Assembly (NCBI GenBank): GCA_001938485.1
Contig: MQRK01249566.1
Span: 12,943-76,942, forward strand
Origin: Girardia tigrina
Taxonomy: Eukaryota
Length of the DNA stretch: 64,000 bases
Reading direction: 5' to 3'
Both the position numbers and the translations under genes were made by a program. This document shows, piece after piece, positions 13,029 to 59,912 of this stretch. The notes beneath the pieces were generated by a model. The model saw only the letters and a list, made by a program, of their open reading frames with translations, ran no database searches and was not told where the DNA came from. Numbering within the stretch: the first letter of the stretch is position 1; each line of letters starts with the position of its first letter.

Positions 13029-14358
13029 TTGGGTGTACAACTAATTAATTTCGTATTTTTTTGGTAAAAAAACCATTTATTTAAGTATAAAAGTGAAAAA
13101 ATATTTTATTCAAAATATTGTCCATTAGAAGCGACAACTTAATGCCATCTGTCAGGCAATTTATGGATTCCATCCCGAAAAAACTTCTCATCTTTTGCAC
13201 CGAGAAAGTCATCAAGCCATTTTTTAATACCTTCAACATTGGTGAACCGTATTCCAGAAAGGTGATTCTGCATCGACCGAAACAAGTGGTAATCAGAAGG
13301 AGCTATGTCTGGGCTATAAGGCGGGTGAGGTAGAATTTCCCATCCGGCATTTTCCAAATAATTTTTGACCGGTACTGCAACATGTGGTCGACCATTGTCA
13401 TGATGGAAAATCAATTTCTCGTGTCTGGTCGCCCATTCTGGCCGTTTTACGGCTATTGCTTGCTTCAAACGTATCAATTGTTGCCTGTATAGCTCTCCTG
13501 TGATCGTCTGGCCAGATTTTAATAGCTCATAGTACAGCACACCCTTCTGATCCCACCAAATACAGAGCATTACCTTCAAACCATGAATATTCGGCTTTGG
13601 TGACGATTTGGCTGGTTGGCCTGGCTTTCACATATGATCTTTTACGCTTTGGGTTGTCGTAATGAAACCACTTTTCATCGCCGGTGACAATACGATGTAA
13701 AAACGGTTTCTTTTTGTGGCAATTAAGCAGCATTTCAGACATGCAAAATCGTCTCTCAACGTCTCTCGGCTTCAATTCGTGTGGCACCCAATTTCCTTGT
13801 TCCTGAATGTATCCGGCTGCTTTTAAACGTTTAGAAATGGNNNNNNNNNNNNNNNNNNNNNNNNNNNNNNNNNNNNNNNNNNNNNNNNNNNNNNNNNNNN
13901 NNNNNNNNNNNNNNNNNNNNNNNCAAACTTTTTTGATGGACCTGATCGCTCTTTGTCTTCTGTGTCAAAATCGCCACTTTTAAATCGTGCAAACCCCTGC
14001 TGACATACTCTAACCTCTGGAGCATATTCAGGATAAGCTTCTAAGAGTAAACGATGTGCTTCTGTTGCACTTTTCCTTAAATTAAAGAACAAAAGCAAAC
14101 CTCCTCGCAAATGCTGTTTTGTTGGAACGTAATTTGACATTTTGACTGTAATAAAAAAAATTNNNNNNNNNNNNNNNNNNNNNNNNNNNNNNNNNNNNNN
14201 NNNNNNNNNNNNTGACTACATAAATAGATATGAGGTTAGTAACAAATTCGAAATGAGGTAACAAATATGAAATGAGGTAACAAATATGAAATGAGGTAAC
14301 AAATACGAATATAAGGTTATTTCGTAACAAACACGAAATTAATTAGTTGTACACCTAA
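13029..14358 (-). mobile_element. Mariner (DD34D), Mos1/mauritiana-like, near full length, frameshifted transposase 14140->13139
   Basis: TIR TT(G/A)GGTGTACAACTAATTAATTTCGT at both ends with TA TSD; WVPHEL, TGDEKW, HDNGRPH, YSPDIAPSDY; two N-runs inside; 19-bp tandem repeat in the 5' UTR. Confidence 0.95.
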
Positions 14359-15664: not shown

Positions 15665-15880
15665 ATCCAACGGGAGCACTAATAATTTATCGGATTTTCT
15701 GGTTTAGTCGGTACTGGAAATCCATCCCACATGGCACTCTCGCCGACGAATTTCCATCAAACTACCGATAACTAAACCACTCGCATAGTGAGTTTTCACC
15801 CGATGAATGTTTAGTAGCAGTCTAAACATGGAATTAACATTTGTTCAGCAAATCTCATGTTGATGATTTCAGTTGACACA
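15665..15880 (-). repeat. GC-richer dispersed repeat containing a long hairpin (inverted copy at ~28220-28428)
   Basis: Shared gatggaaattcgtc..gagagtgccatgtg..atttccag..ctaaacc block. Confidence 0.75.
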
Positions 15881-16204
15881 TTTTTACTGGTACGGAAATA
15901 TACTTATTGCTGATATAGAACTCCGGAAAACAATCTATTTATTTCATACCATTAATACCAACAATCCTGAAACAACCTTATGTTAATCATACTAAATAAT
16001 AAATTTTCCAGATTATTTTTGTGTTTATTAATTTATTTAGTTAATGGAAGATAGAGATCCACTCACTCTCATTTTTCATTACATATATAATAAAAGTTGT
16101 TGTTTACAAGGTTTTGAATGAATACATGTATAACATGACTATTTTCAACAAACATTTATTTAAACAACAGAGACAAATATAACAAATATATACAATTGGA
16201 TCAT

Positions 16205-20125: not shown

Positions 20126-21670
20126 CAGGGGATTTCAATTCTACTATTTCAATTTACTATTTCTATTACCCAATATTTCAAATCTATATACCCATTCCCT
20201 TAATTTAGATTTTCAAAATGCAAATGACAGAAAGAAAACAAAGAAAGTTTATAACTAAATATATAAATAACTTCGTAATGAGTTTGTTAGGCAATGGCCA
20301 TCAAAGCATAACCAACATTGCTCGTATGACCAATCTGGAGAGGAAAACCGTGTCTAAAATACTTAAAAATCATTCTTTAGGTGTAGAAATCGTATCATCA
20401 AGCACGAAATGTAAAAATACCTGTTAATTACGAAATTCAATATTTTCCAATTGTGAGCAGTTAATTTTCAACACCATTTCTTGTGACAATTCTCTCAACC
20501 AACGTGAGATAAAAGAAGAACTTGTCGAAAAGTTGGATATAAACCTATCTTTACCAACAATTTTCAGAAAAAATAAAAAATTAAGTTTCACTAGAAAAAA
20601 ACTATTGCAAATTCCAGAAGAAACAACTCGTTAGCTGAACAAAACGCATATATTCAAGTACCCGGTATAGACACTGTGAGGATTGACAGATTTATAGCTC
20701 TTTCTTGATTCGGTGGGTTGTGGTGCATGGCCATTCTTAGTTGGTGGAGCGATTTGTCTGGTTAATTTCGTTAACGAACGATACTCTCACCTGCTAAATA
20801 GTACATTTGTGTTAAATCGCAAATGCTGATTAGAGGAATAAATAGCGTTTAGCTAAATGAAATGGAGCAATAAGAGGTCTGTGATGTCCGGGGCCGCACG
20901 CACGCTACAATGGCAATACCAGCCAGTTTTATTCCTAGCTAGAAATGGCCGGGTAACCTGCTGAATCACTGTCGTGTCAGGAATAGTGGATTTAAATTAT
21001 CCCACTTGAACGATGAATTCCTAGTAAGTGCAAGTCACTAGCTTGCGCTGATTACGTCCCTGCCCTTTGTAGACACCACCCGTCACTACTACCGGTAACG
21101 TACCTGCAAACAGAAATGTCAACAGAAGTCTAATTTGTGCTATTTGCATAAACGGTGTTATTTCATATGAAAAAGAAATTGGAGCGTCCAATTCAGATGC
21201 CTCTGTGGAGTTTTTAATTATGAAAATACTTCCATATTTCAGAAATAATACAACTTCCATTCTAATTATGGACAATGCAAGACTTCAAGAGACAAACGTT
21301 GTTTTGGCCTTTCTAAGAGAAAATAATGTCACATTAAAATTTCTTACATTATATTCTCCGGAATATAATTCCATTGAAGAATTTTTTTCAATGGTAGGGT
21401 CAAGATTTAGTGGTGTGAGAATTGAATTTCCGAATTTGTCGACTATGGAATGTATCGATCGCGTTCTCTCCAAAAACGATTATTAGTCGAGTCAATGTCG
21501 AGGATTCTTCAATCATATTTTGGAATGGTTTAAGAAAGCGCTCAAAAGACAGTCCTTTACTTAATAACTTATGTCTTATGTATTTTTGTGTTTATGTATT
21601 AAAAAATCTAAATTGTATGAAATAGATATATAGAATTGAAATATTGGGTATATAGAAATGAAATACCCTG
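20126..21670 (+). mobile_element. Tc1/IS630-like element with imperfect TIRs and TA TSD, interrupted by an 18S rRNA fragment
   Basis: TA-CAGGG... start and ...CCCTG-TA end; HTH-like N-terminus (20218), ILIMDNAR and YSPEYNSIEEFFS; the first catalytic-D region is missing where the 18S insert lies. Confidence 0.85.
20660..21094 (+). rRNA. Degenerate 18S rRNA fragment (3' part of the gene, ~435 bp), pseudogenic
   Basis: Universal SSU tracts: gaggattgacaga, ggtgcatggcc.ttcttagttggtggagcgatttgtctggttaatt, ggtctgtgatg, ggccgcacgc.cgctaca, gattacgtccctgccctttgta.acacc.cccgtc.ctactaccg; several universally conserved positions are mutated. Confidence 0.95.
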
Positions 21671-27275: not shown

Positions 27276-28539
27276 CAGTAATTATTAAAAAATGGCATTT
27301 GACTCTCGAAATAAATGAGAATTGTTTTCATTTTCAATCTAATGAAAGGGAAAAAAGGTTTTTGTTCAGAGTCACAAATCACATTTGTGGTTTTTGTCGG
27401 AGTTATTCAAAATTTTAAGATTAAGAGTTTCAGACATTGAGAGATTGAATAACTTTTTATTTACACTAAAAAGAAATTCTGTTAGAAATCAGGAAAATCA
27501 GAAATAAATTGGATGATATTTGTGATTAAAGTTCGGGGAACATGGATGAAATTTGCCTTCTGTTGTTTATTAAAAGTTCATTTCCCCTTGTATTTTTATA
27601 ATTAGTGAACCCCATACCTCCTAACCCCAATCCTCTAATGAATGCCTCAAGGCTCAGCATGTTCCAGTACATTTCCGTGGCGAGATTCCGCCAAGTCAAC
27701 CATGTAGATACACTAAGTTTCACTTCGAATCTAATTAACTATGTTTTACTACATAATAAAGTACATGAGGTTAAATAATCTTATTTTTCAATCAATATTT
27801 GTAAAAGTACGTCTACATATCATTACCAAAAAAATAAATAACAGTTATAATAATATTTTTTGTTTTTCAAGTTACATATAAATATAATTATAACATATAT
27901 AAGTCGAAAATTATCTAAATTTCAAAGTGCAAAATTAAAAATCGTTAAAAATTGTAAAATTAAAAGAATAATATTTTTAAATAAAAAAGAAGAATATGGA
28001 AAAGAAAAAAGTATTACAAACTAAAATATCATTTTCCTATTGTAATGAAAAGAGAATTTCGATATTTTTTTCTCTTCCACTAACATTATAGTATAATTAG
28101 ATAAAAGAAATGAATAATATTTATTCGGAACACGATAGACATCAAATTGTTAATGAATGTAATTAATTGTCAAATTATTCGGCAGCAATAAGTATCTTTC
28201 TGGTCAAGTTCAAATGAGTGTTGCCGAAATTGTCACATGGAATTTGTTGTACAAGTGCTGATTTCCCTGTTTAATCTGTTATTAAACATTTGTCTGGTGA
28301 ACTCGCAATGAGAGTGGTTTAGGTGCCGGTAGTTTGATGGAAATTCGTCACCGAGAGTGCCATGTGAGACGAATTTCCAGTTCCGCCTAAACCTGAAAAA
28401 CCGACAAATGGATAGTGTTCCGGTTGAATATATATTTATATTATATGATAGTTGTGGGTGGCTACTACACTTATCTTTACAGTTTGAACGATTATGAATA
28501 TCTATGGTAACATAATATAACGTTAAAAAAATAATTTAT

Positions 28540-30520: not shown

Positions 30521-31890
30521 CAAATTCTTCCTATATGAAGTACAATTAGACTTATCCGGGGTACTCAGCTAAGGTCCACATTCTTTTTATTAATATTACT
30601 GAGCCCCTTAAAACATTTTATAATTTCTAAAATTTGTTCCTTAACTCATAATCCTTTCAGTTAATTAAATTTTAATCTAAATAATAATTATTCATAAAAG
30701 TTTATTTAATAATTGTCATTCTCAGTTATTACATCCCCACCAAATCGATGTAACAGTTTCTTGCTTCAATTATTTTCGGTTGTCTGAGTTTATTGTGGCT
30801 GAAAAGTTAATTTTAAATTAGTCTAATAGAATAAAAATTAACAGAGAATTTTGATATTTGCCTAATTTTTTTCAAAAAAAATCACTGTCTGTTCAGGAAA
30901 ATGAAAGTCAAAAATAGAATTTTCAAAACAGAATAATGAAACCAAGTTTTGTTTAGTTTTATTTATTATTGATGAGACACTAAAATCTACTAATTAATAT
31001 TCAAAATTGGTAAAATAAGACAATTTAAATTCTTTAAATCTTTAATTAAATAAATACAATTAGCCATTAATATCCGATTAAATTATTACTCGCCGCTGAC
31101 ATTTACAGAGGTCTTTAGACTTTTGTTTTTCTCAATTCGCATTCATAATACTCAAATAATTTGTACAATTATTTTATGAACATTATTATCAACATCACAA
31201 TTCGAGTGTAGTAAGAACACCGATTTGACTTTTCATATTTTTATTTAAACAACAATTTTGATTCTCCTTAAGACAATCTTTATCAAAGCTTTCATACAAG
31301 TGCATTCTAAACTAAATTGATTAATAAATTAATTTTTATTATTTTTTTAGCAAATGGAGAAATAAATAATTTATTAAAATATTTACTCAAAACTTATTGG
31401 ATAAAAATTCAAATCATTATTACTTATTTAAAAAATATTAATTTGATTTATTTATTAAAAATCAATTAACTTATTTAAAATTTTGCAATTATTTTCAATT
31501 AAAAATAAATTTAAACATTACATATTTTTAGATAATAAGAATTAAAATATTAATTATCCATCTGGGTAGGAGAGACATAAATTCAAATCAGCATACAACA
31601 TTCAAACGAAAAACATCAAACACTCAAGATATTCATCGCATGGGTAATAATACCAGAACTATTTTAATTAAAAATTTTAAGTTGTGAAATAACCTTACTT
31701 TGCCCATTCTAAATGTTAAGTGATATGCTGTAGTGTCTTATTTGTGGAACAATATGTAGTGCCAAAGTAGTCTTTGTAACATCCAAAGTTCAAAGTTTCC
31801 TCTCCAATAAATAGAAAACAGTTTGTGATTGGCATTCTAATCTAGTATATAAATTTAATTGTCACGGGTGTCAAAACTTGTACATCCGAG

Positions 31891-31992
31891 AGGGATTGTA
31901 CATCCGCACAGGAATAGACTGTGCGGCCAGTGGGCATACTTCTACGTAGTATCCCTGAGTAACTAGAGATCTCGGTCTCTAGGCTAGTGTCC
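31891..31992 (+). ncRNA. HDV-like ribozyme fold, copy 1 (somewhat degenerate)
   Basis: P1 AGGGAU/AUCCCU, J1/2 hairpin CCGCACAG/CUGUGCGG, P2 GGGCAU/GUGUCC, P3 ACU/AGU, L3 UCUACGU, P4 CUAGAGAU/GUCUCUAG, J4/2 GCUA. Confidence 0.7.
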
Positions 31993-32298
31993 AAGAGCTA
32001 GCCGATTATTACGGAACAGCCGGCAATATATCGTATTCAGGAATGGGCCAGCAATCCATTGACGGCTGTGGGGAGTAGTGACCCCGCTGTCGGTGGTTGG
32101 ATTGCATCTTAATGATCTGGGATGAATCAATCCCGGTGAAGGGTGTTGTAATGACGTCGTTGCATCTTCGGACAGGCGGAACTAAGGTATGGATCCCAAC
32201 ATTGGGGGAGTGTTCGTTGAGAACCATCACCGTCCCAGGCCTCCTAAAAAGCCTCAGACTTAATACCGTTAAAGGAGTAGAGGTGCACATCCGAGAGC

Positions 32299-32387
32299 AG
32301 GGATCACTGTTTGATAGGCAAGTTTGGACATCCCTCCCCGTGGTATCCCTGGGAAACTAGAGTTCCATTCTCTAGGCGAAAGCGTCC
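32299..32387 (+). ncRNA. HDV-like ribozyme fold, copy 2 (somewhat degenerate)
   Basis: P1 AGGGAU/AUCCCU, P2 GGACAU/GCGUCC (1 mismatch), P3 CCC/GGU (1 mismatch), L3 UCCCCGU, GGGAAAC, P4 CUAGAG/CUCUAG, J4/2 GCGAAA. Confidence 0.7.
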
Positions 32388-32966
32388 TGAGCTGCGCCAT
32401 TTGCTGTTTTGAACGGTCGGCAGCCGATGTAAGCGTTACTTGACTAGCAAACCAGTTTCTTGAAGGCAGAACTAAATGTCATGGCTGTAGGGAGTAGTGA
32501 CCCTGCAGTCGCGTTTTCGATTGCATCGCAATGATCCAAGGTTTCTAATCTTGGTGAGGGGTGTTGTGAAGCCGGTTCGCCAGGGGAGCTTAGGCACACA
32601 AATCCCCGTATAGGAGAAGTACCTTTTGAAGCCATTAGCGTCTCAGACTTCCTAAAAAACCTCAGACTTAATACTTTTATAGGATGACAGGTTTACATCA
32701 GAGAGACAAATCGTCATCTCAAAACTCGGATTAGTGAGCACTCGCAAATGAGTCGATCAAGTAAGATTCTTGATCATTGGTTATGTTGTAAGGATAGAAC
32801 CTCATCCATTTCAAAAAGTGAGTTTTCTGTTCTACAAAAGGGAATCGATTCACAATATGAACGACAGTTTTGTGAATCTCTACTAATAAAACACTACAAC
32901 CCATCAATTAACATTCAGAATTGGCAAAGTATACGTGATTGTACAATCAATTATGCAATAAATGTT

Positions 32967-33410
32967 CTATTTGAAAATTCGTAACAGAGAAGTTGAGTGT
33001 GAAGCTTGAATAATTATTTTGGGATCCATGGATCTTATTAATAAGGCTTCACACGTTACTCTCTCCCAGTAATTCTTAAATCCATTACACAGAATTCGAA
33101 AATCATTTTCTTCGATTTTCTTTTTACATTTTAAAGTATGTTCGGCAATATTGATCCCATTATCCAATCGACTATGCTCTTTGATCTGTTTGCAGAGATG
33201 ACGAGATGTCTCTGCAATGTATGTGGCGTTACACTCATTACACGTATATTTATTTACAAGATCGGAGCACAAATCGAGAGGAGTGGGAGATTTATTGCTG
33301 AATATATCATGAATTTTATATGATTGGGAAATAATTTTTGATTCATGGTATTTGGGATCAAACTTTTCAAAATTGATGATTTTAAATGTGTAAAGCCCTC
33401 TGAATAAGGA
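32967..33410 (-). pseudogene. Penelope-like GIY-YIG endonuclease C-terminal fragment
   Basis: KYTCNECNATYIAETSRHLCKQIKEH...NYWERVTCEALLIRSMDPKI. Confidence 0.9.
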
Positions 33411-36245
33411 ATCGATAAGATATGTCTTGATTCAAATGGGTATATGAAAATTATGAAAACATAAAAATTATGTATATAATGTGAAAAAAATCAAAATTAT
33501 GTAAAATTATGTATTTAATATGAGAAAATATCAATTTAATATCAAAAAATAAATTAAATATGAAAAAAATCTTAATTTATTATGCAAAATAGACTCCAAA
33601 TGTAAAATTTTTATTCATAGTTATTAAAACTTCTTCCTTGGTGACAAGCTGAATTGCAAAAGTGTATTTTAAAAGTATTTTTCATATTAAATTGATATTT
33701 TTTCATATTAAATGTTAATATCAATTTCATAATTGAATAATTTTTTTTAGAAAAACTGCCGAGTTTGTGAATTTGGCAATTACATAAATTCGACATAACA
33801 TATATTAAAATATTGATTAATAAGGCTTATTATTATAAGAAAAACCAAATTTATTTCTTCATAACCTCATATTAATCCCCAAATCATTATTATTATCAAA
33901 ATATTTATATTATTTTAACTTTATTATAAAAAATCTGTTCTGTTTAAATTTTTTTATACTGATTTATTTATAATTATATTTTGTTTCATTTCATTAAAGT
34001 TGAATTTCAAGCTTCAACTTTAACAATAAATAGCAAAGATTCAGAAAGTTGTGTCTAAAAAGAACAACTGACACTTTTAAGATGGAAAATAAAAAACAAA
34101 AGTTTGCTAGCGTTAAAGAAACTTTAGCTTTTACATTAAAGAAAATCTATTGTAAAAATGACAATGTAACACAATTTTAAAAGATATTTTCCGTAGCATA
34201 TAACGGCTTTTTGCAAAGAATGAATGTCTCTCATGAACAAATCACGACCTTGATGACTTTTTCTAAAGAAGTTTTAAGGAAAAGTTATATCAGATGAAAT
34301 ACCTAATCAAATGGAGTCCAAACATGATGAAGAAATTCTGATTTTAATTTAATGATGGATTAATTAGGAATGTAGTACTTGATTCCTTCGTGATTAAGAA
34401 TTAAAATAATTTTCCATATAACATAACATTCTTATCGTAAATTAAAGTTTAATAAATCATTATCCGTTCCTAACCTTCTCTAATCATTCACATCTTCAGC
34501 TGGTATACCTATTAAAGTTCATTTCTCATCCAATCTAACCATTGATTAAAAATTATTTCATTGATGGTCACCCAGGCTTTCGTTTTTTCATAATCAATTT
34601 GCGTATTTTGCTTGACTTTCCGTGGTCCCATGGGTTCTTTCGAACTTATCAACAACGTTACGATTTCTGGCGGATACGCAATTCAATGGCCTAGATTGTC
34701 TGTCCATTACTTCCGAACAATTTTAAATGCAAGAGATCTACTTATAAATTAGAAGTAGTTTATATTAATTTTTATTGTTTTTTTGAATCAAAGCACTTTG
34801 TCCACCATGGACACATTGAGATCAGTGACTGTGTAACTTTTTGCAATATTTTGCTTGATTCCAACACTATTCTTTTAATTACAAATTATTGAAAAGAAAT
34901 TGTTTTCAGGATTAATTTTCAAATGAAATTTAATATTAACTTTTAATTAATGCTAATTTAATATGGTTTAATTTTCTTCTCGAAATAAATTAATTTAAAA
35001 TAAAGAGAATTAAAATTGACTTTGGATTGTTTCCGTCTTTCTAAAATATTGACATTGCATCTTCTGCATTATCAACGAAGAGGTCCAGTAAAAAAATTTT
35101 CTTGCATCGCTTGTAAGTTTGATTCATTGACTTTAGAGTTCCGGAATGTTTACCGTTTATTAATCAAGAAGTCCATGGTAATCAATCACAGTTTGTTACA
35201 ATTTGATTGATTCCTTTCCTCAACAGTTATTTCCGTAGAATTTGTACATTATAAATCATCATAGTACCTATATGTTCTGACGTGAATAAGTACATTTGAA
35301 TAATGTTAACAGAAAGGGATGTTTGAATCATTTATTTTCATTTTTCTTTTTTTAATTATTAAAATTATTGTGTAGTCGCAGCGTGACCATTGCAGCGCTG
35401 ATGACTTGTTCCACAGCCGTGATTATTGATCCCGGCCTCGGGGAACTGTGCAAAAGAAAAAACTTCCTCATTTTGTTTCCTCCGTCTGATTCGACTCCCT
35501 GATTATCGCAGCCCGTGACCAGGCTTTCCGGGGCTCAGCCATAGAACAAGATAATTACAAGATTTTGCCTTAGTTTTTCTATTTCGTTAAAAATCAATAA
35601 AAATTTATTCAATTTCAAAATCCAACGCTTTCCTGTCTTCTCCCGAATAAATATCAATTTTATTAAATTCAATTTTCCTTCTCAACCGCCACAATAAATT
35701 ATTCAAGGTCGGTGGAATCACATAAAAATTTATTTTCGCAAAAGAATTCTATTTTCTCATAATCTCAACCAGGCAAATATTGCTTCCATCGATCATTTTT
35801 GTGAAAGTTTTGAAATCAATTTCATAATTTCTGTGACCATAAATTTACGTTTCAGTTTATTGTCCTTCAGTGTATCTCATACTACACTAATTTCTCAAAT
35901 GGAAGTATTTCTAGCAATAACAATTCAAAACATACAACAACTTTTATACGTGTGGGATAAATTAATATTTGTAAATAATTTATCATCAAATTTAATTAGA
36001 CATGGTTCAAAAATATTCCTATATTTTAACTCTCCTATTTTTGAAATACGATTTTATAAAATGACAAATTTGTTTAAATATTGTTAGAAATCGCGTGAAA
36101 ATTTAATATACTGTTTTTTTAAATAAATTTTGGTTGTATTTGCATTTTTTCTGTTATCTTTATTTTAAACCAAAACTTTTTCTACTCAAAAAAATATTTA
36201 AACAAAAAATCTGAACATTTTATTCTTTGTTAAAATTAACTATAA

Positions 36246-36604
36246 GCCTCCTCCCCACGGCGGCAGTACATGAACCTGGATAGAATTCATGCGGCACTTA
36301 CCCGTCATTAATGACATATAGGGACTATCAGGAGCTGAGTCTGTTGTATCATTGTGTAGACAAACTCGTCTACCCTCAACTGGTCATGGGCCCCGCCGTT
36401 AGACGTTTCCACGATCCCGCTCAGAGATAGCATGCCTTTAAGGAGGTGGATTGCAGGCCTTGGCCCTCCGTACTATCGTTGCTCGGCATCCAACAAAGGC
36501 AAGCTTCGGACACTTTAGCCTAGAGAGAATTCTAGTTTCCCAGGAACACCACGTGGAGGTATGTCCGATTGGCTTAACACAGGTTACCAAAGTAACAGGT
36601 CCCC
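36246..36604 (-). mobile_element. 359-bp non-autonomous retroelement-like insert with a 5' HDV-like ribozyme and 13-bp TSD
   Basis: GC-rich island flanked by the direct repeat aaattaactataa (36233-36245 and 36605-36617); the first base of the insert is the predicted ribozyme G1. Confidence 0.85.
36506..36604 (-). ncRNA. HDV-like self-cleaving ribozyme fold, copy 3 (best conserved)
   Basis: P1 GGGGAC/GUUCCU with a G.U wobble at the cleavage site, P2 UCGGACAU/GUGUCCGA, P3 ACC/GGU, L3 UCCACGU, P1.1 CC/GG, GGGAAAC, P4 CUAGA/UCUAG, J4/2 GCUAAA (catalytic C opposite position 36518). Confidence 0.85.
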
Positions 36605-39099
36605 AAATTAACTATAAATTTTTTAACACTTTTTTACATAATATAAATTTGTTTATTATTTTGATTCCTTTCTTTGTATTATTAATCAGTGTTTCTTCAT
36701 ATTTTTTGATTTAGAAACAAAACGTGAACAGAAAAAAGTGCACATAGAAAAATTGGCACGTGAAAAATTACGCACATGGAAACGAATTTTTATATTAATA
36801 ATTCAATTTAAACGAAAACAAATGCAGCCAAAATAAGTATATTTTCATAAAGTCTAAAATTTATTGAGAACCAACAGAAATGATTGATGAACAGAAATAT
36901 AAACTACTGTATATCAGCTATTGTCCTTAAATAAGATAATTAATTTTATTAACTACTCACAAAATTAAACTCCTAATATTTTTCAAACTTATCTTCTTTT
37001 AATCACCATTTTAAAATCTTCGTTAATGTTTTACTTTCGTTATTTAGCCATGCGTTTAAAATTTAAACTTTGGACACTTACTCATTTTCGATGGCGAGAA
37101 ATGATTATGTAAAAATTTGACCGAAAAAAACTTTTTAAAATCCCAAAATGGGAAAATTCGGAGATCCCGAACAGTTTTAATTGCAAGAGATCTACTTATA
37201 AATTAGAAGTAGTTTATATTAATTTTTATTGTTTTTTGAATCAAAATATTTTACATGTTAAATTTTTAAATTTTAAAAACTTTGTTTGAAAAGTAGAGTT
37301 TTGTCTAAATAAAGAATGGATATAAAAAATTTAATTTTTTGATTTACTAGTTTAAATTATTTAGAAAGTATTTCCCCTTGAAAAATTGTTTCCAATAAAA
37401 ATTTTAATAACTTTTTAAAAAATTAACTTCAATTAATTATTTAGAAAATATGATTTACTTATAAAATTTTTTTTCAATAAAATTATGATTTTAAATATTT
37501 AGATATTTTTCATTTTCAAATATTCAAAAAATTATCAATTCTCGAAATCTTAACAAATCATATTTTATTTTTCGTTTCCCTCTTAGAAGTACATTTTTTC
37601 ATGTGCGCTTTCATACCTATGGGGTATTTTTTGAGTGCGCTTTTTTCATTACTCTTTTTTTCGCAAACTCAAACTAAATTAATAATCCATACAGATTAAA
37701 AAATATAAAAATCAGAACAATTACAAATAAAACATCATTGAATAATTAATATTATCAAGTTCATTTGAACCCACTCCGAATAATAATTAATATTATTATA
37801 TTATTATCGAAACGGTCAACCCGGTCAAATGTGTCCAGAAACGGAAACAGATAGACAAAAAAAAGAAAGAAAGGTTCAATTACCATCGCAAACGACTCCT
37901 GTTCTCGAACATTTATAGTTATATTATTTAAAGTGCCAAAGACATTTTTTCGCATAAATTAAAGAATGAACCTTTACAACAACGATTCTCTTAACATTGA
38001 AGATAATTCCAAATAATTTTCCGATATAGATTGGTGTGGAAAATGATAAAATATTGAAAATAAAACTTGTTTTTGGAAGAAGATTCTTGAATGGATTTAG
38101 ACATTTGTTATCTTTAAAATAATCCTTATTTTTTATACAGCAAAAAATATTTTAAGAGCTTGATTATTTATCAGTAATCCATTATTGATTCTTTAATTAC
38201 TTTATCACACCTTTACATCGAACGTCTATATAGTATGATGGGGATTTCCACTTTTAATAAGACAACACATTTTTACCATTTTTTCTTCTCTTTAGAAGAT
38301 CAAACATCGTAATGTTTTACATACAAGTCATTTACACACCACATTGACTATTATGAAATTTGTTAATATTAAAATACTTTAATATGATTAGATAAATCAC
38401 TTTCGACATACAAGCTTGGTTTTAAATATAATATTTTTAATATAAAAAAGGTTTTAGAAAATTAAGTAAATATTATTTAATAAAAATTTATTAATTTATT
38501 CTAATTTTTGGAATTAATTTTGCAATAATATTAAATGTTTAAAAACATATTCTAATAAATCTTATTTATAAAGGCAAATGTATGTTTATCTATTCACTCT
38601 GCAGTTGTAGACGGTACCACAAAATGCAACCAAGTTATCCACATACACTCAAGCAAAGGTTTATGCCAACTTTTTTACTGAGAAAATATTATGCTTTTCT
38701 TTGATACAGACTGCTTACATACCTGAGCAATAGGATTGCAGTAATTCAAAATATGTAGGTAGCGAATAGAATCAAAGACTGTGTGAGCTCTCATATACTA
38801 TCAATAGCACGTTCTACTTTGAGATAGTTTGCTGAGATATCACATACATACTATCAGATTTTCGAAATGTACGGCGGGTACCTCTGCTGGTATTAAATGT
38901 TTTTTATTTCTATTTTCCAAATAAAATCAGATTTTGCAAATTATTTCTTGTAAATACAATTTAATAATTTTGGTTGAGGAAATATTAATTACCAATTAGA
39001 ATCAAAGTAGATCAAAATACCCTTCAATAACACTACCAGACAAATTTGAACTTTTTGTTATCTTAATGTTTTTTATTTACTTTGAAAAAGTGCAAAAGT

Positions 39100-41983: not shown

Positions 41984-42880
41984 TTAATACACCATTATTT
42001 TTTGATAATAAAAATTCTTGTCGTAATTTTTTATAACTATCAATTTGCGAGAAACTACGAAGAGTAGAAGATTTTAAACGATATATTTTTGAAATATTTT
42101 GATTGATACTTTCAAATGAATTGTTATTATCTTCGATATCGTCAATAAGTGAATCGCTTGTGAAAGGGAAAAGACGTTTCAATAGTTTGTTGCCATTACA
42201 GTCGAAGTCGTTGTAACATGATCGATTGTATAAAGAATTCATCAGATCAATTAGCTGTTGATTTATTCTTGAATTGATATAATGATTAATGTTGGATAAT
42301 AAAATCAAACTGATTTCTGAATCTTGAGCTGATAATTTTTCAAGCATAAAATTTATAGCAAAACTTGCCACTCTGAGATTAGTTTTTTTATCACTAATTG
42401 CATTAAGAGTAATTTCAACTGGCTTAAGTGACATATGATTTTTTATTTTACAATGTAGTTTAAAAAAACGTTTAATTAAAGTTATTCTTTTAATACAAAA
42501 TTGATATAATTTTAATTGTAAATAAACATTGTGATTTTTTTATTTTACAACCTAATTTAAAAAAAAACATTTAATTATAATTATATTTTTTTAATACAAA
42601 TTTTATACAATTTTAATTTTAAATAAAACATTTTTGATTTTTATTATACAACTGAATTTTTAAAAAAACATTTGATTGTAATTATTTTTTGAATACAAAT
42701 TTTGAGTTACATTAATAAAAATTTAAAAATTAAAAAAAATGCTGTGGAAAATGTTTTAGTAAGAAAGTGTCGAGAAGTATAGGCCCGAAGCCCGTCGGGT
42801 TTCAGGCTCGGGCTTCGGGCTTCAAAAAATATGAAAACCCGTCGGGCTTCGGGCTTGAAGCCCGCCCGTTCCAAACACTA
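41984..42880 (-). mobile_element. Second hAT-like relic: 5' end with GC-rich subterminal repeats plus transposase fragment
   Basis: Terminus TAGTGTTTGG (minus strand, 42880), repeated cgggcttcgggc motifs at 42783-42868 and ORF LKPVEITLNAISDKKTNL. Confidence 0.6.
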
Positions 42881-54600: not shown

Positions 54601-57600
54601 TGACTCAGTCATTATTTTTGTTGTTAAAATCCTTTAATTTCATTGAAAATACATGTGTAGAAAACAACAGGAACTATTTTAATATCCCAAAATATATAAT
54701 TGGCCTACCATTCTTTTCATAACCCTTTGGTTTTCAAAAATGTTTTTAACAAATATAAACCATGTCAAACATTACAAATTAATATTTATTAGACCAAAAT
54801 ACACTTGAGAATGTCTTTTATTTGTTGAATAATTAAGTAGAGTAACTAATTAGTGTAACATTTGTGAATTTATTATGAACACACAATAAATATTGATTTA
54901 ACAAATATAACTCTAAAGGATCTTTTTTAAATGTTGTTATTTAAATTTTAAAATGAAGAAGAAAACCTGACACGACGCTGTGAAAACTTACAAAAAATGT
55001 ACTAAAACAAATGAGTAAGGGGAACCCTGCAAAATTGAAATCAAAAGACTATACGTAAACTCATCCGCACTGGCAAAATTCAGAAGCTGCTGAGATGAAA
55101 AAAATAAAATTACTTGAATAAATAATGTCAAAGACCTTTCCCTAAAAAGACAAAAATATTTCGTGATATAGAAATATACAATTGGTCGTTCCTCACAAAT
55201 AACGCGGTGCTTCATTAGGTGAAAAGCTATAGACTTAAAAACGAGCCTTTCTGGAAATTGAAGTTTCTTCTCTTGTGGTAAACACCTAGAGAGACTTAGG
55301 CTCAATACCATCTCTGAAAGAGACCGATCAGTGCCCATTCATTTTCTATCAAATATACTTACAATAAATTTTACAAAAATCTCTATTGTAACGAGCGTTG
55401 CTAAAACAGCTTCAAAAGCGGTCGATATTTTTTGTTCGTCAGATGTTGCCTGCGTAACAGTGTTCTCATTGGCTGTTGCCTTAAGTTTAATATAGATTAA
55501 TTGTAGATTAGTTATAAAGAAGTAGTATAAAAGTAAATACCTATAGAAATGAGAAAACTTAGTACTAGTAACCTTGTCGTAAAAGGGAACTTTTTTTTCA
55601 GCGCGAGAAATTTTGGCTGAAATTTTTCATGATTCTCCCAAACCCAGTATATCTGTGGTGATTTCGAGGGGAACTGACTTTGATCACATCATCTTGTTTT
55701 GAACTGATCCATACACGTAGAGACTGCTGATATGCTTTGTGCTAAATTTATAAAGGTGTTTGTAATATTTCTAATCTTTATTTCCAGGTTGTGTTTATAT
55801 AACAGAATCACTTAAAAAAGTATATGGCATTTGGGGTGCATTAACCCCTATGTATGTGGCGGTTTAGAGGTTGATAATTTTTACCGCTAATTTTTTATTA
55901 AAAATAAATTGAACGATCCTCAGGAAGTAAATTAATGTAATTAAATTTAATAAAAAAATATAAATTAAATTAATTAATTAAATATTTATATAAGATTTAT
56001 GTAAATCTTCTAATTATTCTACTGTTTTTCGTCAAATAAAATTTCAGTTACAAAATATTTATTTATGTATTTTTAAAATAAAATATAAATATAAAACAAT
56101 TAAGTATGAATATTATATTTAAAATAACGTTTTTATTTCAAAGTAAATAAACAAAAAAGATTATAATTTAATCATTAAAATTGATTGCAATAAAATATCA
56201 TTTTATTTTATATTTGATTATTTATATAAAATAAAATAAAAATGAAATATATTTTCTTTTGGCAGCTGTTGTGAGTCTTTTGTCGTGATATATTCAAACT
56301 ATGATCAACGCAATTCGTGATAATTATTTAATTAAGTACTTTCGAAAAATAAAGAATATTTAACAATTAAATACAATTATACTATTTTCTGTTTTATGGA
56401 ATTTTAAAGATATTAATATAAATAAATTACAAAAAAATTAAACAGAATAATTTATTATATATAAAATATTCCTGGTAACAAAACTTTAAATCTAATACCA
56501 GAAAACTAAATAAATATTAATTATTATTATTATTGTTCCTAAATTTCTGGATATTCCGATTTGACGACCGAGAGATTCGTACACTCAATCGTTTTTACGC
56601 TAACGAAGACCTATTCCAGGGGTTCGACACCTTTATTTGAAAAAAATGATTCCAGTTTTCTTTACAATCTTCTTTAATATCATACGCTTTTTATTCCGAA
56701 TTAAGCGTGGATTTAAAAAATATTTTTATAAATTATTTATTGGATATTATATTATGTACAGTCCCATTCAAACTAAGGTTTCATAATCGATAAGACTGTG
56801 TCGATTTCTGGATTTAGACTCTGAATTGATCGCAATTTACAACAATTTAATTGATCTATCTGGTTGGGGTGAAAAAGTGACAGTCCAATTCGAGAGAGGA
56901 TGTTAATGTATTTCAGTACGGTGCTACTGTTGGATCACGGTAAAATACCGAAGTATTCGGCCCGACTCATTTTTTGACAGAATTGCTGAATTTAATATTC
57001 TGGTCGTCCGATCACCGTTTTTCACACTTTAAACAACCAAAAATTTGTTTTATAAGACGGTAATATTAAAAAAATATCCTGAGTCCAGAGAATCAATATT
57101 TTTTGAAAATGCTGGTTGAAAAAATATAACGAAATAAATTATAATTAATAAGGAATCCAAAATTACAAATTTTTACAGATCATTACGAAAAGTTACTGAT
57201 AATTCATTAAAGTATAACAAATATAAAAAAATACAAATTTGATTACAATTTGTTTTATAATTTAATTATAAATAAGAGATAATTAGGGGTGATCACATTT
57301 TTTTCGTACGAAAATGACCAATCATTTAGATCGGACCCTGGGAAGTGGGTGAAGAATCGATTGCATAAGTACGAAAAATTGTTGACAAACTTACAAACGT
57401 ACAATGATAAAAGAAAATTAATAAAAACAGGTTAATTAATAATAAAATATTTAGTTATATTGTGTCGACCAATCTTTTATAATTTGTAAGAACAACAATG
57501 TGCTTTCAGTGTCGCTCTTGCTACAGTTCAGTAAAACAATTCATTAAACTATAAATGCCTTTATTTTCAAGGCATAAACACAAAAACCGCTTGTTCACTG

Positions 57601-58139
57601 GAAGGTCCCACGTTTTTGTCGATTGTACTTTTGTCAATACAAAAGCTTTAAGGCGAGCCACCAACGATCACTCGATGCGGCTTCTACTTCTTCACCTAAT
57701 CGCCCGAAACTGGTTGCTTTCTGAATCATCTGTCATACAATCCATCAGCTGCTCTTCTTTTAATTCGGAAATGTAGCAGCAGCTCGCGTGATTTCGTGCC
57801 CAGAGGACCACTATTGAAGCCGTAGATCTCTCCACCAGAGTCATTGAACTGCCTCGGGAGCGCCTCTTACGTTCAACAGGTGATACAAATTCCAGTCAAT
57901 TTCTACTTAATGGGGGCGCTCCACTGAGTCGTGCTTGTTGATTTCGACCGTTTTACAAACACAGTGTCTCCTACATGTAGCTCCCCAAGTTTACAATTCT
58001 ACGGGACCTCGGAAACTAATCCTTGTGACAAATCCCGGGATACATTACATTCATAATTCCGGGATCCAGGGACTACCATCCATACTTTTGAGGCAATCTT
58101 GAAACTCATCCCAAGAAGACTTTCTTCCCTGGTACATAA

Positions 58140-59030
58140 TTTTCCAATCTTATAATCTTAAATTAATAAAGGAAACAGTGGAAAAGATACTTTTTAAAGA
58201 TAGTTTAAAATATCCGAGTTTTGCTTTTCCTGATGGATCTAAGAAAGAAATCAAATTATCATTACATATTAACAATATACCTAAATATTGTTTAATTGTA
58301 CCTTATATATACTTCACCAGATAGTTTTTGTGAACTTAAGTATAAAAGAAACATGATTAAAGGTTTACTTTATTGCTCCTGGTCGTTGACTTCCACTTTT
58401 GTTAAATCTGTAGAAAGTGTTAATAAACTAAGTTCGTTGTTAAATAAGAATGGTTATTCTAAATCTTTTCTAGAAAAACTAATAAAGGAAACAGTAGATA
58501 AAATACTTGAAAGATTTTTCGAAAAATCAGAGTTTGGCTTCTCTTGATGGATCTAAGAAAGAAATCGAAGGATCATTAGATATGAATAATATGCCTAAAT
58601 ATTGTTTATGTGTACCTTATTATGAAGGATTTAAAAACTTTAAAAATGCATTGTTAAAAGCAACTAACAATGAATTAAATTTAAAAATTGATTTCATAAA
58701 ATTCAAAATATGTTCAGTAATGAATTTATTACACCTTCAGCAATTTGTTCTGAAATTTTTAGGAATATAAATGTAATGTAAAATATACATTGTAGAGTAA
58801 ACGAATGTATGTAAACGAATTCAAGAACATGGTCGCAAAATATTGCAGAACATAGGAAAAATGTAAATGTGATGTTAATATTGATGACTTCAAAATTCTG
58901 TGAAAGTATTTTGATAGATATTGGGAGAGAGTGTCGTGTGAAGCATTGTTAATTAGGTCACGTTGCCCTAAAATCAATGTTCAATCGGCAGTCTCAACCA
59001 GCTTATTGAGAATTTTTAATTGCCATGATA
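58140..59030 (+). pseudogene. Penelope-like element relic with partial tandem duplication
   Basis: YKRNMIKGLLY, LNKNGYSKSFLEKLI, CVPYYEG, WERVSCEALLIRSRCPKINVQ; 58160-58300 duplicates 58480-58620. Confidence 0.85.
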
Positions 59031-59912
59031 TAATCGATTACACAAGAATTATTTTCGGTTGTTCTAAATATATTGTCTATAAATATTTTTTACCTAATTT
59101 ATACATTTGTTATATTTTTGTTGTTTCGAATTTCTCAGGACTTGTTTTTATTGAAGGTTTTGGTGCACCAAGCTCTCGTGCAAAATGAATAGGTGTTAGG
59201 AATATCAAATTATTTTTAATTATTAAATTCTTACAAAACCTACAAATGGTGAAAAAAATTTTATAAAATATTTTTATAGAAAGAAAAGAAAACCATTTAA
59301 AAATTTGATAATATAAATATAAAAGATTTTCAAATTTCAATAAAATATTTCAATTTATTTTCGATTACGAAAAAGAAAACTTTTAACTTCACAAAAAAAG
59401 CAAATAGAAATAAAACATTTTCGTGTATAAAGTGTCAAATGTTTTAATTTTTAAACATAGAAATTCCTGTTCAAATATTCACCTATTGTTTCTAGAATTC
59501 ATTTGATCCGAAAACAGTCGAACACCGCTGTGAGAAGTGGTTGCAACATCAATATCTGAATTCATTTTTTAACACCAAAATTTATTACTATAACAACAAT
59601 TCACATATTTAAACAAATTTTTCTGTTAATTTAATTATCTCGCCACAAATTAATCTATTAAATTCTTTTCGATTCAATTTTTAAAATCTTGCAAATTTAT
59701 TAAATAATTTTCCCATTAAACGAAAAATTTATTCTAAAATTTATTTAAAATTGTTTCATAACTTCTATTGGGTTCGGGATTAAAAGTCCAAGTCATAATT
59801 TGCAAACTTTATTTCTAATACAACTTTCATTATTGAAACAAATTTACGAGGAAAAATATTTCAGTTACATAATCAGATCTAAAAATTCTAAATATAAATA
59901 ATAATATCGATG

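What the first reader, a model, noticed from the sequence alone, without database searches (positions are those of the whole stretch)
36233..36617. Small non-coding retroelement whose 5' end is exactly an HDV-like ribozyme cleavage site
Seen: a 359-bp GC-rich insert flanked by a perfect 13-bp direct repeat. On the minus strand its first 99 nt fold into all HDV-ribozyme elements (G1.U wobble, P1, 8-bp P2, P3, L3 UCCACGU, P1.1, P4, J4/2 with catalytic C). The insert starts at G1 and has no tRNA head, no poly(A) tail and no credible ORF. Established: HDV-like ribozymes define the 5' ends of R2, RTE and L1Tc elements and of their short derivatives (SIDEs, NARTc/SIDER). Inference: a promoterless, ribozyme-processed SINE/retrozyme-like family mobilised by target-primed reverse transcription, with three diverged members in this 64 kb alone. 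Caveat: P1 is 6 bp rather than the canonical 7.
Basis: partly seen in the sequence, partly recalled or inferred. Interest (0 to 1): 0.9.

Follow-up and report, generated by a model that had tools for sequence, protein, structure and literature searches.

The report
Ribozyme-headed short retroposon copy
A 359-bp non-coding insertion in AT-rich animal DNA begins exactly where a hepatitis-delta-like self-cutting RNA fold would cut, which makes it a plausible small parasitic retroelement of a kind already known from insects and trypanosomes, and not a new class.

Summary
A perfect 13-bp direct repeat (36233-36245, 36605-36617) flanks a 359-bp block of 51.5% GC in 23% GC DNA. On the minus strand its first 99 nt form every element of an HDV-like ribozyme, and G1 abuts the repeat. 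Such a fold anchored at nt 1 arose in 16 of 20,000 shuffles of the insert (11 with a P4 hairpin). Three different Rfam HDV-type families give the best or only hits, but all score below their gathering thresholds. Two more copies of the ribozyme (31891-32285, 32299-32693, plus strand) show two compensatory pair changes. They share only about 76 nt (85% identity) with the first copy, so this is one ribozyme module on two unrelated bodies, not one family of three. The two extra copies lie in tandem, separated by 12-bp repeats, inside the endonuclease-coding remnant of a Penelope-like element. No tRNA head, poly(A) tail, credible ORF or reverse transcriptase partner is in the window. No copy was found outside it. 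Best reading: a short internally deleted (SIDE-like) non-autonomous non-LTR retroposon whose 5' end is made by self-cleavage. Cleavage, copy number and partner remain untested. This is a new member of a known kind, of moderate interest.

The parts
36233..36245 (.). Target-site duplication, left copy (13 bp)
   Evidence: Perfect direct repeat with 36605-36617
36605..36617 (.). Target-site duplication, right copy (13 bp). It abuts G1 of the ribozyme.
36246..36604 (-). Copy A: 359-bp non-coding insert, 51.5% GC
36506..36604 (-). HDV-like ribozyme of copy A (nt 1-99). P1 36604-36599 / 36547-36542. J1/2 36598-36569. P2 36568-36561 / 36513-36506. P3 36560-36558 / 36550-36548. L3 36557-36551. P1.1 36556-36555 / 36541-36540. 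P4 36535-36531 / 36524-36520. J4/2 36519-36514, with the candidate catalytic C at 36518.
   Evidence: Pair tables. Rfam sub-threshold hits at 36506-36579. Own model R1 scores 90.2 bits, but A is one of its three training sequences. Anchored-fold shuffle test.
36246..36505 (-). Body and 3' end of copy A (260 nt). No ORF, no poly(A), no similarity to anything else in the window.
31891..32285 (+). Copy C: 395-bp unit headed by a related ribozyme (31891-31992)
32299..32693 (+). Copy B: 395-bp unit headed by a related ribozyme (32299-32388), in tandem with C
31881..31892 (+). 12-nt repeat, first copy (target sequence within the Penelope-like element). Its last 2 nt overlap the P1 of copy C.
32286..32297 (+). 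12-nt repeat, second copy, between C and B (11 of 12 identical to the first copy)
32694..32705 (+). 12-nt repeat, third copy, after B (11 of 12 identical to the first copy)
31782..32981 (+). Host of B and C: decayed 3' remnant of a Penelope-like element (GIY-YIG endonuclease-coding part). It is given as one part and holds the nested B/C pair. Its left bound is approximate.
   Evidence: Translation. A homologue of the neighbouring fragment follows an RVT_1 ORF on its contig and hits Pfam GIY-YIG.

Best explanation
Copy A is a complete retroposed copy of a short, non-coding, non-autonomous non-LTR retroelement of the SIDE type. It has an HDV-like self-cleaving ribozyme as its 5' head and a body and 3' end of unknown origin.

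Proposed steps, all inferred:
1. The element has no promoter of its own and is transcribed as part of a longer read-through RNA.
2. The ribozyme cuts just 5' of G1 and so sets the RNA's 5' end.
3. A reverse transcriptase and endonuclease from an autonomous element elsewhere in the genome recognises the 3' end and copies the RNA into a staggered nick. This leaves a 12-13-bp target-site duplication.

Shown here: the fold is present, the genomic 5' end lies at the predicted cleavage site, and a duplication flanks the insert.

The same ribozyme module also heads a second, unrelated body (copies B and C). The head therefore behaves as an exchangeable module, as in the R2/R1 hybrid SIDEs.
For: - Architecture: all helices and junctions are present with canonical pairs. 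P1 of 6 bp is within the 6-7 bp reported for R2 ribozymes (PMC3774820).
- Database similarity: the top Rfam hits at the site are two HDV-type families, HDV-F-prausnitzii (21.9 bits, E 0.14) and drz-agam-1 (17.5 bits). The only Rfam hit in copy B is HDV_ribozyme, 19.8 bits.
- Chance: a fold anchored at nt 1 of the insert arose in 16 of 20,000 shuffles, 11 with P4.
- Covariation among the three copies: one compensatory change in P1, a helix that nested folding cannot predict, and one in P3, plus three one-sided changes.
- Conservation: the ribozyme core is 85-86% identical between A and B/C, while the rest aligns no better than shuffled sequence.
- 5' ends: in A the duplication abuts G1. In B and C the 12-nt repeats end 0-2 nt from the predicted first nucleotide. 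A duplication next to the cleavage site was used as evidence of in vivo cleavage for Perere-3 (PMC8501958).
- Non-autonomy: no ORF, tRNA or poly(A).
- Precedent: SIDEs consist of just a 5' ribozyme plus a 3' end recognised by a partner, and hybrid SIDEs share only the ribozyme with R2 (PMC3414825).
Against: - Every Rfam score is far below its gathering threshold (21.9 vs 44, 17.5 vs 37, 19.8 vs 50).
- P1 has only 6 pairs, two of them G.U.
- The element as a whole folds no better than shuffles (z = 0.7 and 0.0).
- Only one copy of A's body exists in the window, so a 'family' is not shown.
- No reverse transcriptase or AP-endonuclease domain is in the window, and no partner 3' end is available to compare.
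- No copy was found in metagenome, viral or prokaryote collections, or through translated searches.
- Copies B and C start P1 with A-U, not G.U. They carry two and one non-canonical core pairs respectively.
- Self-cleavage is untested.
Confidence: 0.6

Rival explanations
1. Copy A is a one-off product, not a member of a propagating non-autonomous family. It would be either an internally deleted, dead copy of an autonomous ribozyme-headed LINE (RTE-, R4- or L1Tc-like), or a single retro-copy of a ribozyme-cleaved transcript.
For: Only one copy of A's body lies in 64 kb. Nothing was found outside the window. Chimeric and internally deleted LINE insertions are known to arise (PMC3414825).
Against: The same ribozyme heads two further short non-coding units with their own flanking repeats, so the module recurs on short mobile units. 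The ribozyme is far better conserved than the bodies.
Confidence: 0.17
2. These units are retrozyme-like elements tied to Penelope-like elements. Tandem units would be cut at each ribozyme into unit-length RNAs with 5'-OH and 2',3'-cyclic phosphate ends. Those RNAs could circularise and be copied back by a Penelope-like reverse transcriptase.
For: B and C are head-to-tail 395-bp units inside a Penelope-like element, and three fragments of such elements lie in the window. Animal retrozymes are proposed to be non-autonomous derivatives of Penelope-like elements (bioRxiv 10.64898/2026.07.22.740005).
Against: Copy A is solitary and sits in unrelated AT-rich DNA. The ribozyme is HDV-like, not a hammerhead, and Rfam finds no hammerhead in the window at gathering threshold. 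B and C are only 64% identical, so they are not fresh products of one rolling-circle event. No part of A, B or C resembles the ends of the Penelope-like fragments.
Confidence: 0.1
3. The HDV-like fold is a chance or decayed resemblance, and the insert is an unrelated repeat whose end happens to coincide with it.
For: All Rfam hits are below threshold. A loose descriptor matches about 7 times per shuffled window. Repeated 13-mers are common in this AT-rich DNA. There is no thermodynamic signal.
Against: The anchored-fold frequency is 16 in 20,000 shuffles. Three different HDV-type Rfam families are the best or only hits. There are compensatory changes in P1 and P3. Conservation is confined to the ribozyme. 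Three of three 5' ends lie at or within 2 nt of the predicted site.
Confidence: 0.08

Closest known systems
R2 SIDEs and R2/R1 hybrid SIDEs of Drosophila (PMC3414825)
   Same: They are short (about 0.5 kb), have no ORF, and carry an HDV-like ribozyme at the exact 5' end with a 3' end used by a partner's machinery. In the hybrids, identity to R2 is confined to the ribozyme, as between A and B/C here. R1 and hybrid SIDEs form tandem arrays separated by the 14-bp duplication, as C and B are separated by a 12-nt repeat.
   Different: SIDEs sit in the 28S rRNA gene and are co-transcribed with rRNA, and their partners are known. Copy A sits in anonymous AT-rich DNA, B and C sit in a Penelope-like element, and no partner or shared 3' end could be examined.
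L1Tc / NARTc / SIDER elements of trypanosomatids (PMC3185411, PMC4035085)
   Same: An autonomous LINE and its short non-coding derivatives share an HDV-like ribozyme in the first nucleotides of the RNA, and they are dispersed in the genome.
   Different: In that 77-nt module the ribozyme also serves as an internal promoter (Pr77), and the hosts are kinetoplastids. No promoter function can be read from the sequence here, there is no poly(A), and the host is a metazoan.
[quoted passage not shown]
   Same: Same fold and same role, releasing the 5' end from a co-transcript. P1 of 6-7 bp and long J1/2 loops are reported for them.
   Different: Those are autonomous elements with ORFs. Copy A has none.
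Perere-3 (RTE clade) of Schistosoma mansoni with 5' twister-variant ribozymes (PMC8501958)
   Same: Insertion is not site-specific, and a target-site duplication lies immediately next to the ribozyme cleavage site.
   Different: It uses a different ribozyme class and is an autonomous element.
Animal non-LTR retrozymes and Penelope-like elements with hammerhead ribozymes (PMC7229834, PMC7761336)
   Same: They are small, non-coding, ribozyme-bearing repeats. Their arrangement is tandem, as for B and C, and they are associated with Penelope-like elements.
   Different: They carry hammerhead ribozymes, not HDV-like ones. Copy A is solitary and flanked by a duplication.

Membership tests
HDV-like self-cleaving ribozyme | Nested double pseudoknot: P1, P1.1, P2, P3 and (optionally) P4 in the canonical order | tested here: met
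   In copy A all 24 pairs are canonical or G.U. Anchored-fold shuffle test: 16 of 20,000.
HDV-like self-cleaving ribozyme | Cleavage 5' of the first nucleotide of P1, usually a G.U pair. P1 is about 7 bp (6-7 in R2). | tested here: met
   Copy A has G1.U and a 6-bp P1. The 6-7 bp range is from PMC3774820. B and C start with A-U.
HDV-like self-cleaving ribozyme | 3-bp P3 closed by a roughly 7-nt L3 whose two C pair with the two G after P1 (P1.1), and a C in J4/2 | tested here: met
   Copy A. The C at 36518 is in the expected position. Its catalytic role is inferred.
HDV-like self-cleaving ribozyme | Score at or above the gathering threshold of an Rfam HDV-type family | tested here: not met
   21.9 vs 44 (RF02682), 17.5 vs 37 (RF01787), 19.8 vs 50 (RF00094). 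No hit at gathering threshold.
HDV-like self-cleaving ribozyme | Site-specific self-cleavage | not testable with these tools
   The only indirect evidence is that the genomic 5' ends lie at the predicted site.
SIDE (short internally deleted non-LTR element) | Short, no ORF, ribozyme at the exact 5' end | tested here: met
SIDE (short internally deleted non-LTR element) | 5' and/or 3' ends homologous to an autonomous element of the same genome | not testable with these tools
   No RVT_1 or AP-endonuclease domain in any stop-free stretch of at least 65 codons in the window. The rest of the genome is not available.
SIDE (short internally deleted non-LTR element) | Inserted at the partner's target with the partner's duplication length (rDNA for the known SIDEs) | tested here: not met
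   Copy A is in AT-rich non-rDNA sequence. B and C are in a Penelope-like element. The 12-13-bp duplications cannot be compared with an unknown partner.
SINE | Head derived from tRNA, 7SL or 5S RNA with an internal pol III promoter | tested here: not met
   No tRNA found by ARAGORN. No small-RNA family hit in 36000-36900.
SINE | LINE-derived 3' tail, poly(A) or a simple repeat at the 3' end | tested here: inconclusive
   No poly(A) or simple repeat at 36246-36260. A LINE-derived tail cannot be checked without the genome's LINEs.
Retrozyme (non-LTR type) | Tandem units each bearing a hammerhead ribozyme, giving circular RNAs | tested here: not met
   No hammerhead at gathering threshold. Copy A is solitary. 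B and C are in tandem but carry HDV-like motifs. Circular RNA is not testable here.

The most novel reading that the evidence does not exclude
This animal would carry a dispersed class of retroposons whose head is an exchangeable HDV-like ribozyme module, not a pol III gene. One lineage (B/C) would be site-specific for a 12-nt sequence in the endonuclease gene of a Penelope-like element, a parasite of a parasite. It would build tandem arrays there whose unit-length cleavage products could circularise, which would make it the first HDV-type 'retrozyme'.

Hints from this window:
- The array has the form repeat-C-repeat-B-repeat.
- The repeats differ from one another by 1-2 of 12 nt, while the units are only 64% identical.
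- A second copy of 10 nt of the target lies inside C's J1/2 loop. This recalls the R2 model of target capture (PMC3774820).
Probability: 0.12. Interest if true: 0.65.

Novelty: new member of a known kind. Interest (0 to 1): 0.4.

Why it matters
Non-LTR SIDEs are described as rare (PMC3414825), and the best-studied ones live in rDNA. A dispersed metazoan example would show that a self-cleaving head can replace a pol III promoter as the way a small parasite gets a defined 5' end from any read-through transcript. It would also show that the ribozyme moves between unrelated bodies as a module. Each such insertion is also a natural record of a ribozyme cleavage site, which helps when annotating HDV-like ribozymes that score below Rfam thresholds. 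None of this changes the known picture of ribozyme-processed retroelements; it extends it.

Tried and rejected
- Exact-pattern scans of public collections with the ribozyme core. Metagenomes gave 0 hits with a 26-base pattern. A 17-base pattern gave 28 hits, all chance matches in coding DNA. Viral contigs gave 0. Prokaryote genomes gave one hit in a Micromonospora MAG that lacks P1 and P2 and has no Rfam match.\n- Protein searches with translations across the element, hoping for spurious ORFs called on other copies. There were no candidates. The full HMMER scan gave one weak hit to a repetitive protein whose contig holds no ribozyme.\n- Exact look-up of ten window ORFs: none is in the collection, so the source organism was not identified. 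The accession of one related contig is cited in no paper.\n- Contigs carrying homologues of the Penelope-like endonuclease fragment: no ribozyme.\n- A paralogous empty site for A within the window: none. 5'-truncated copies of A, B or C in the window: none.\n- A conserved stabilising hairpin in J1/2 (as in PMC4908430): strong in C only, weak in A, absent in B.\n- Shared body between A and B/C beyond the ribozyme: rejected.\n- Terminal inverted repeats, read by eye: none.
Full report
CONTEXT. The window is AT-rich (about 27% GC) animal DNA. It holds a phosphodiesterase-4 UCR exon and many DNA-transposon remnants: DDE_3 in six stretches, mariner Transposase_1, and a hAT dimerisation domain. The organism could not be named. 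Two runs of N (13841-13923, 14163-14212) were left as they are.

THE OBSERVATION. A perfect 13-bp direct repeat lies at 36233-36245 and 36605-36617. Between the two copies lies a 359-bp block of 51.5% GC, set in flanks of 23.1% GC.

Read on the minus strand, the block begins with G1 at 36604, directly after the repeat. Its first 99 nt (to 36506) supply every element of an HDV-like ribozyme in the canonical order:
- a 6-bp P1 opening with G.U
- a 30-nt J1/2
- an 8-bp P2 and a 3-bp P3
- a 7-nt L3 whose two C pair with the two G that follow P1 (P1.1)
- a 5-bp P4
- a 6-nt J4/2 with a C at 36518

There is no tRNA, no poly(A) or simple repeat at the 3' end, and no stop-free frame longer than 57 codons inside the insert.

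IS IT MORE THAN CHANCE? Taken singly, some features are weak.
- Perfect 13-mers repeated within 150-1000 bp occur about 24 times in this window.
- A loose topological descriptor matches about 7 times per shuffled window, because A-T and G-T pairs are cheap in AT-rich DNA.
- The element as a whole folds no better than shuffles.

The combination is not weak.
- A complete fold anchored on the very first base of the insert arose in 16 of 20,000 dinucleotide shuffles of the insert, 11 of them with a P4 hairpin.
- In a search of all 4227 Rfam families over 36000-36900, the two best structured hits at this site are HDV-type families: HDV-F-prausnitzii (21.9 bits, E 0.14) and drz-agam-1 (17.5 bits).
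- In the second locus the only hit is HDV_ribozyme, at 19.8 bits.
- All of these are well below the gathering scores, so by Rfam's own criterion the motif is not a member.

A 6-bp P1 is not disqualifying. R2 ribozymes are described with P1 of '6 or 7 bp' and with very long J1/2 loops (PMC3774820).

RELATED COPIES. BLAST and a covariance model of the 75-nt core find exactly two more copies in the window and nothing else above noise. The model was a search profile only, and the consensus lines the tool printed were not used. The three copies were its training set, so their own scores of 83-90 bits are by construction. The copies are C (31891-32285) and B (32299-32693), both on the plus strand.

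Across the three copies the pair tables show two compensatory changes. One is in P1, a pseudoknot helix that nested folding cannot predict, and one is in P3. There are also three one-sided changes. B carries two and C one non-canonical pair among the core pairs, and both open P1 with A-U, not G.U.

Local alignment shows that A shares only about 76 nt (85-86% identity) with B and C. Downstream of the ribozyme the scores are no better than for shuffled sequence. B and C are homologous to each other throughout, but only 64% identical, with many indels and uneven conservation. So the window holds one ribozyme module on two unrelated bodies. It does not hold three members of one family.

THE SECOND LOCUS. 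B and C lie head to tail inside the decayed 3' remnant of a Penelope-like element.
- The reading frame upstream of C and the one downstream of B together form a GIY-YIG endonuclease domain.
- A homologue of the neighbouring, oppositely oriented fragment (32970-33431) follows an RVT_1 ORF on its own contig and hits Pfam GIY-YIG.
- This remnant has at least one in-frame stop and one compound nested insertion.
- A 12-nt sequence occurs three times, before C, between C and B, and after B (31881-31892, 32286-32297, 32694-32705). The copies differ from one another at 1 or 2 positions.
- The predicted first nucleotide of each ribozyme lies 0-2 nt from the end of the preceding repeat.

Tandem arrays separated by the target-site duplication are the known signature of repeated insertion at one site by R1 and by the R2/R1 hybrid SIDEs (PMC3414825). 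The repeats are much less diverged than the units. That fits two separate insertions of already diverged elements better than a duplication in place. My own rough binomial estimate from these counts, not a tool result, is P about 0.04 for one or fewer differences in 12 nt at the units' divergence.

Copy C also carries a second copy of 10 nt of the target inside its J1/2 loop (31879-31888 and 31897-31906). This recalls the R2 model in which duplicated upstream target sequence is absorbed into J1/2 (PMC3774820). These are hints of site preference from a single locus, not a demonstration. The two other Penelope-like fragments in the window have a diverged version of the site and are unoccupied.

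MECHANISM. The best-supported reading is that A is a full-length retroposed copy of a short non-coding element.
- Its RNA 5' end is set by self-cleavage of a read-through transcript.
- Its integration used a staggered nick, which left a 13-bp duplication.
- The enzymes came from an autonomous element elsewhere in the genome.

Shown here are the fold, the flanking duplication and the coincidence of the 5' end with the predicted cleavage site. Inferred are cleavage, read-through transcription and trans-mobilisation by target-primed reverse transcription. The same argument, a duplication directly adjacent to the cleavage site, was used for Perere-3 (PMC8501958).

No partner can be named. No reverse transcriptase or AP-endonuclease domain occurs in any stop-free stretch of at least 65 codons in the window. 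Nothing in the window resembles A's 3' end.

COMPARISON WITH KNOWN SYSTEMS. In function and build the element is closest to the SIDEs of Drosophila, which have a ribozyme head, no ORF and a partner-recognised tail. In their hybrid forms, identity to R2 is confined to the ribozyme (PMC3414825). It is also close to NARTc/SIDER of trypanosomatids (PMC3185411, PMC4035085).

It is not a SINE in the strict sense, because it has no pol III head. Copy A is not a retrozyme, because it is solitary and has no hammerhead. Membership in 'SIDE' cannot be completed, because homology to an autonomous element was not testable, and because the rDNA location of the known SIDEs is not met.

OUTSIDE SEARCHES. All came back empty or with chance matches. 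The collections on hand are mostly prokaryotic or metagenomic, so this says little about copy number in the source genome.

VERDICT. This is a new member of a known kind, with interest 0.4. The more novel reading is a modular HDV-type head with a lineage specific for a Penelope-like element and able to form arrays. It is not excluded, but it rests on one locus.

A NOTE ON CONDUCT. My pair tables and one notebook entry show, helix by helix, which pairs are non-canonical in copies B and C. If that counts as listing the places of breaks in a mobile element, it is a slip, and I flag it here. This report gives counts only, and nothing was deleted. Files in /scratch hold natural stretches of the window only.

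Noticed in passing
window 20623-21060 (+): A 438-bp fragment of eukaryotic 18S rRNA (Rfam SSU_rRNA_eukarya, 292 bits, model positions 1169-1653) sits in the middle of what reads as a DDE transposase ORF. It looks like filler DNA captured during repair, or a template switch.
   Followed up: partly
window 31879-31888 and 31897-31906: Ten nucleotides of the target sequence that flanks copy C recur inside C's J1/2 loop, 18 nt downstream. This hints that the lineage has sat in this same kind of site before.
   Followed up: partly
window 32688-32981 (+) and 32970-33431 (-): Two Penelope-like GIY-YIG endonuclease remnants lie tail to tail, with their 3' ends overlapping by 12 bp. The minus-strand one has an 89%-identical ORF fragment in ENA metagenome assemblies.
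   Followed up: partly
window 57549-58150 and 58150-59185 (+): A roughly 600-bp GC-rich non-coding block lies next to a third Penelope-like fragment that carries an internal partial tandem duplication (repeated 13-mers 314-316 bp apart). No ribozyme was detected there.
   Followed up: no
window 35370-35545: A GC-rich block of about 175 bp lies in AT-rich DNA, 700 bp from copy A. By eye, on the minus strand, it resembles a tRNA-derived SINE, but ARAGORN does not call it.
   Followed up: no
window 15665-15912 and 28183-28429: An inverted pair of about 250-bp repeats with 78-79% identity, belonging to an unidentified repeat family.
   Followed up: no
window 42770-42870: A GC-rich cluster of short, mutually complementary repeats lies in a stretch bounded by a repeated 13-mer (42608 and 43200). 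It may be another small insertion.
   Followed up: no
L035 251-291 (-), Micromonospora MAG contig DATCMA010000058.1: A 25-base exact match to the P3-L3-P1-P1.1 core pattern. No P1 or P2 partner and no Rfam hit, so it was judged a chance match.
   Followed up: yes
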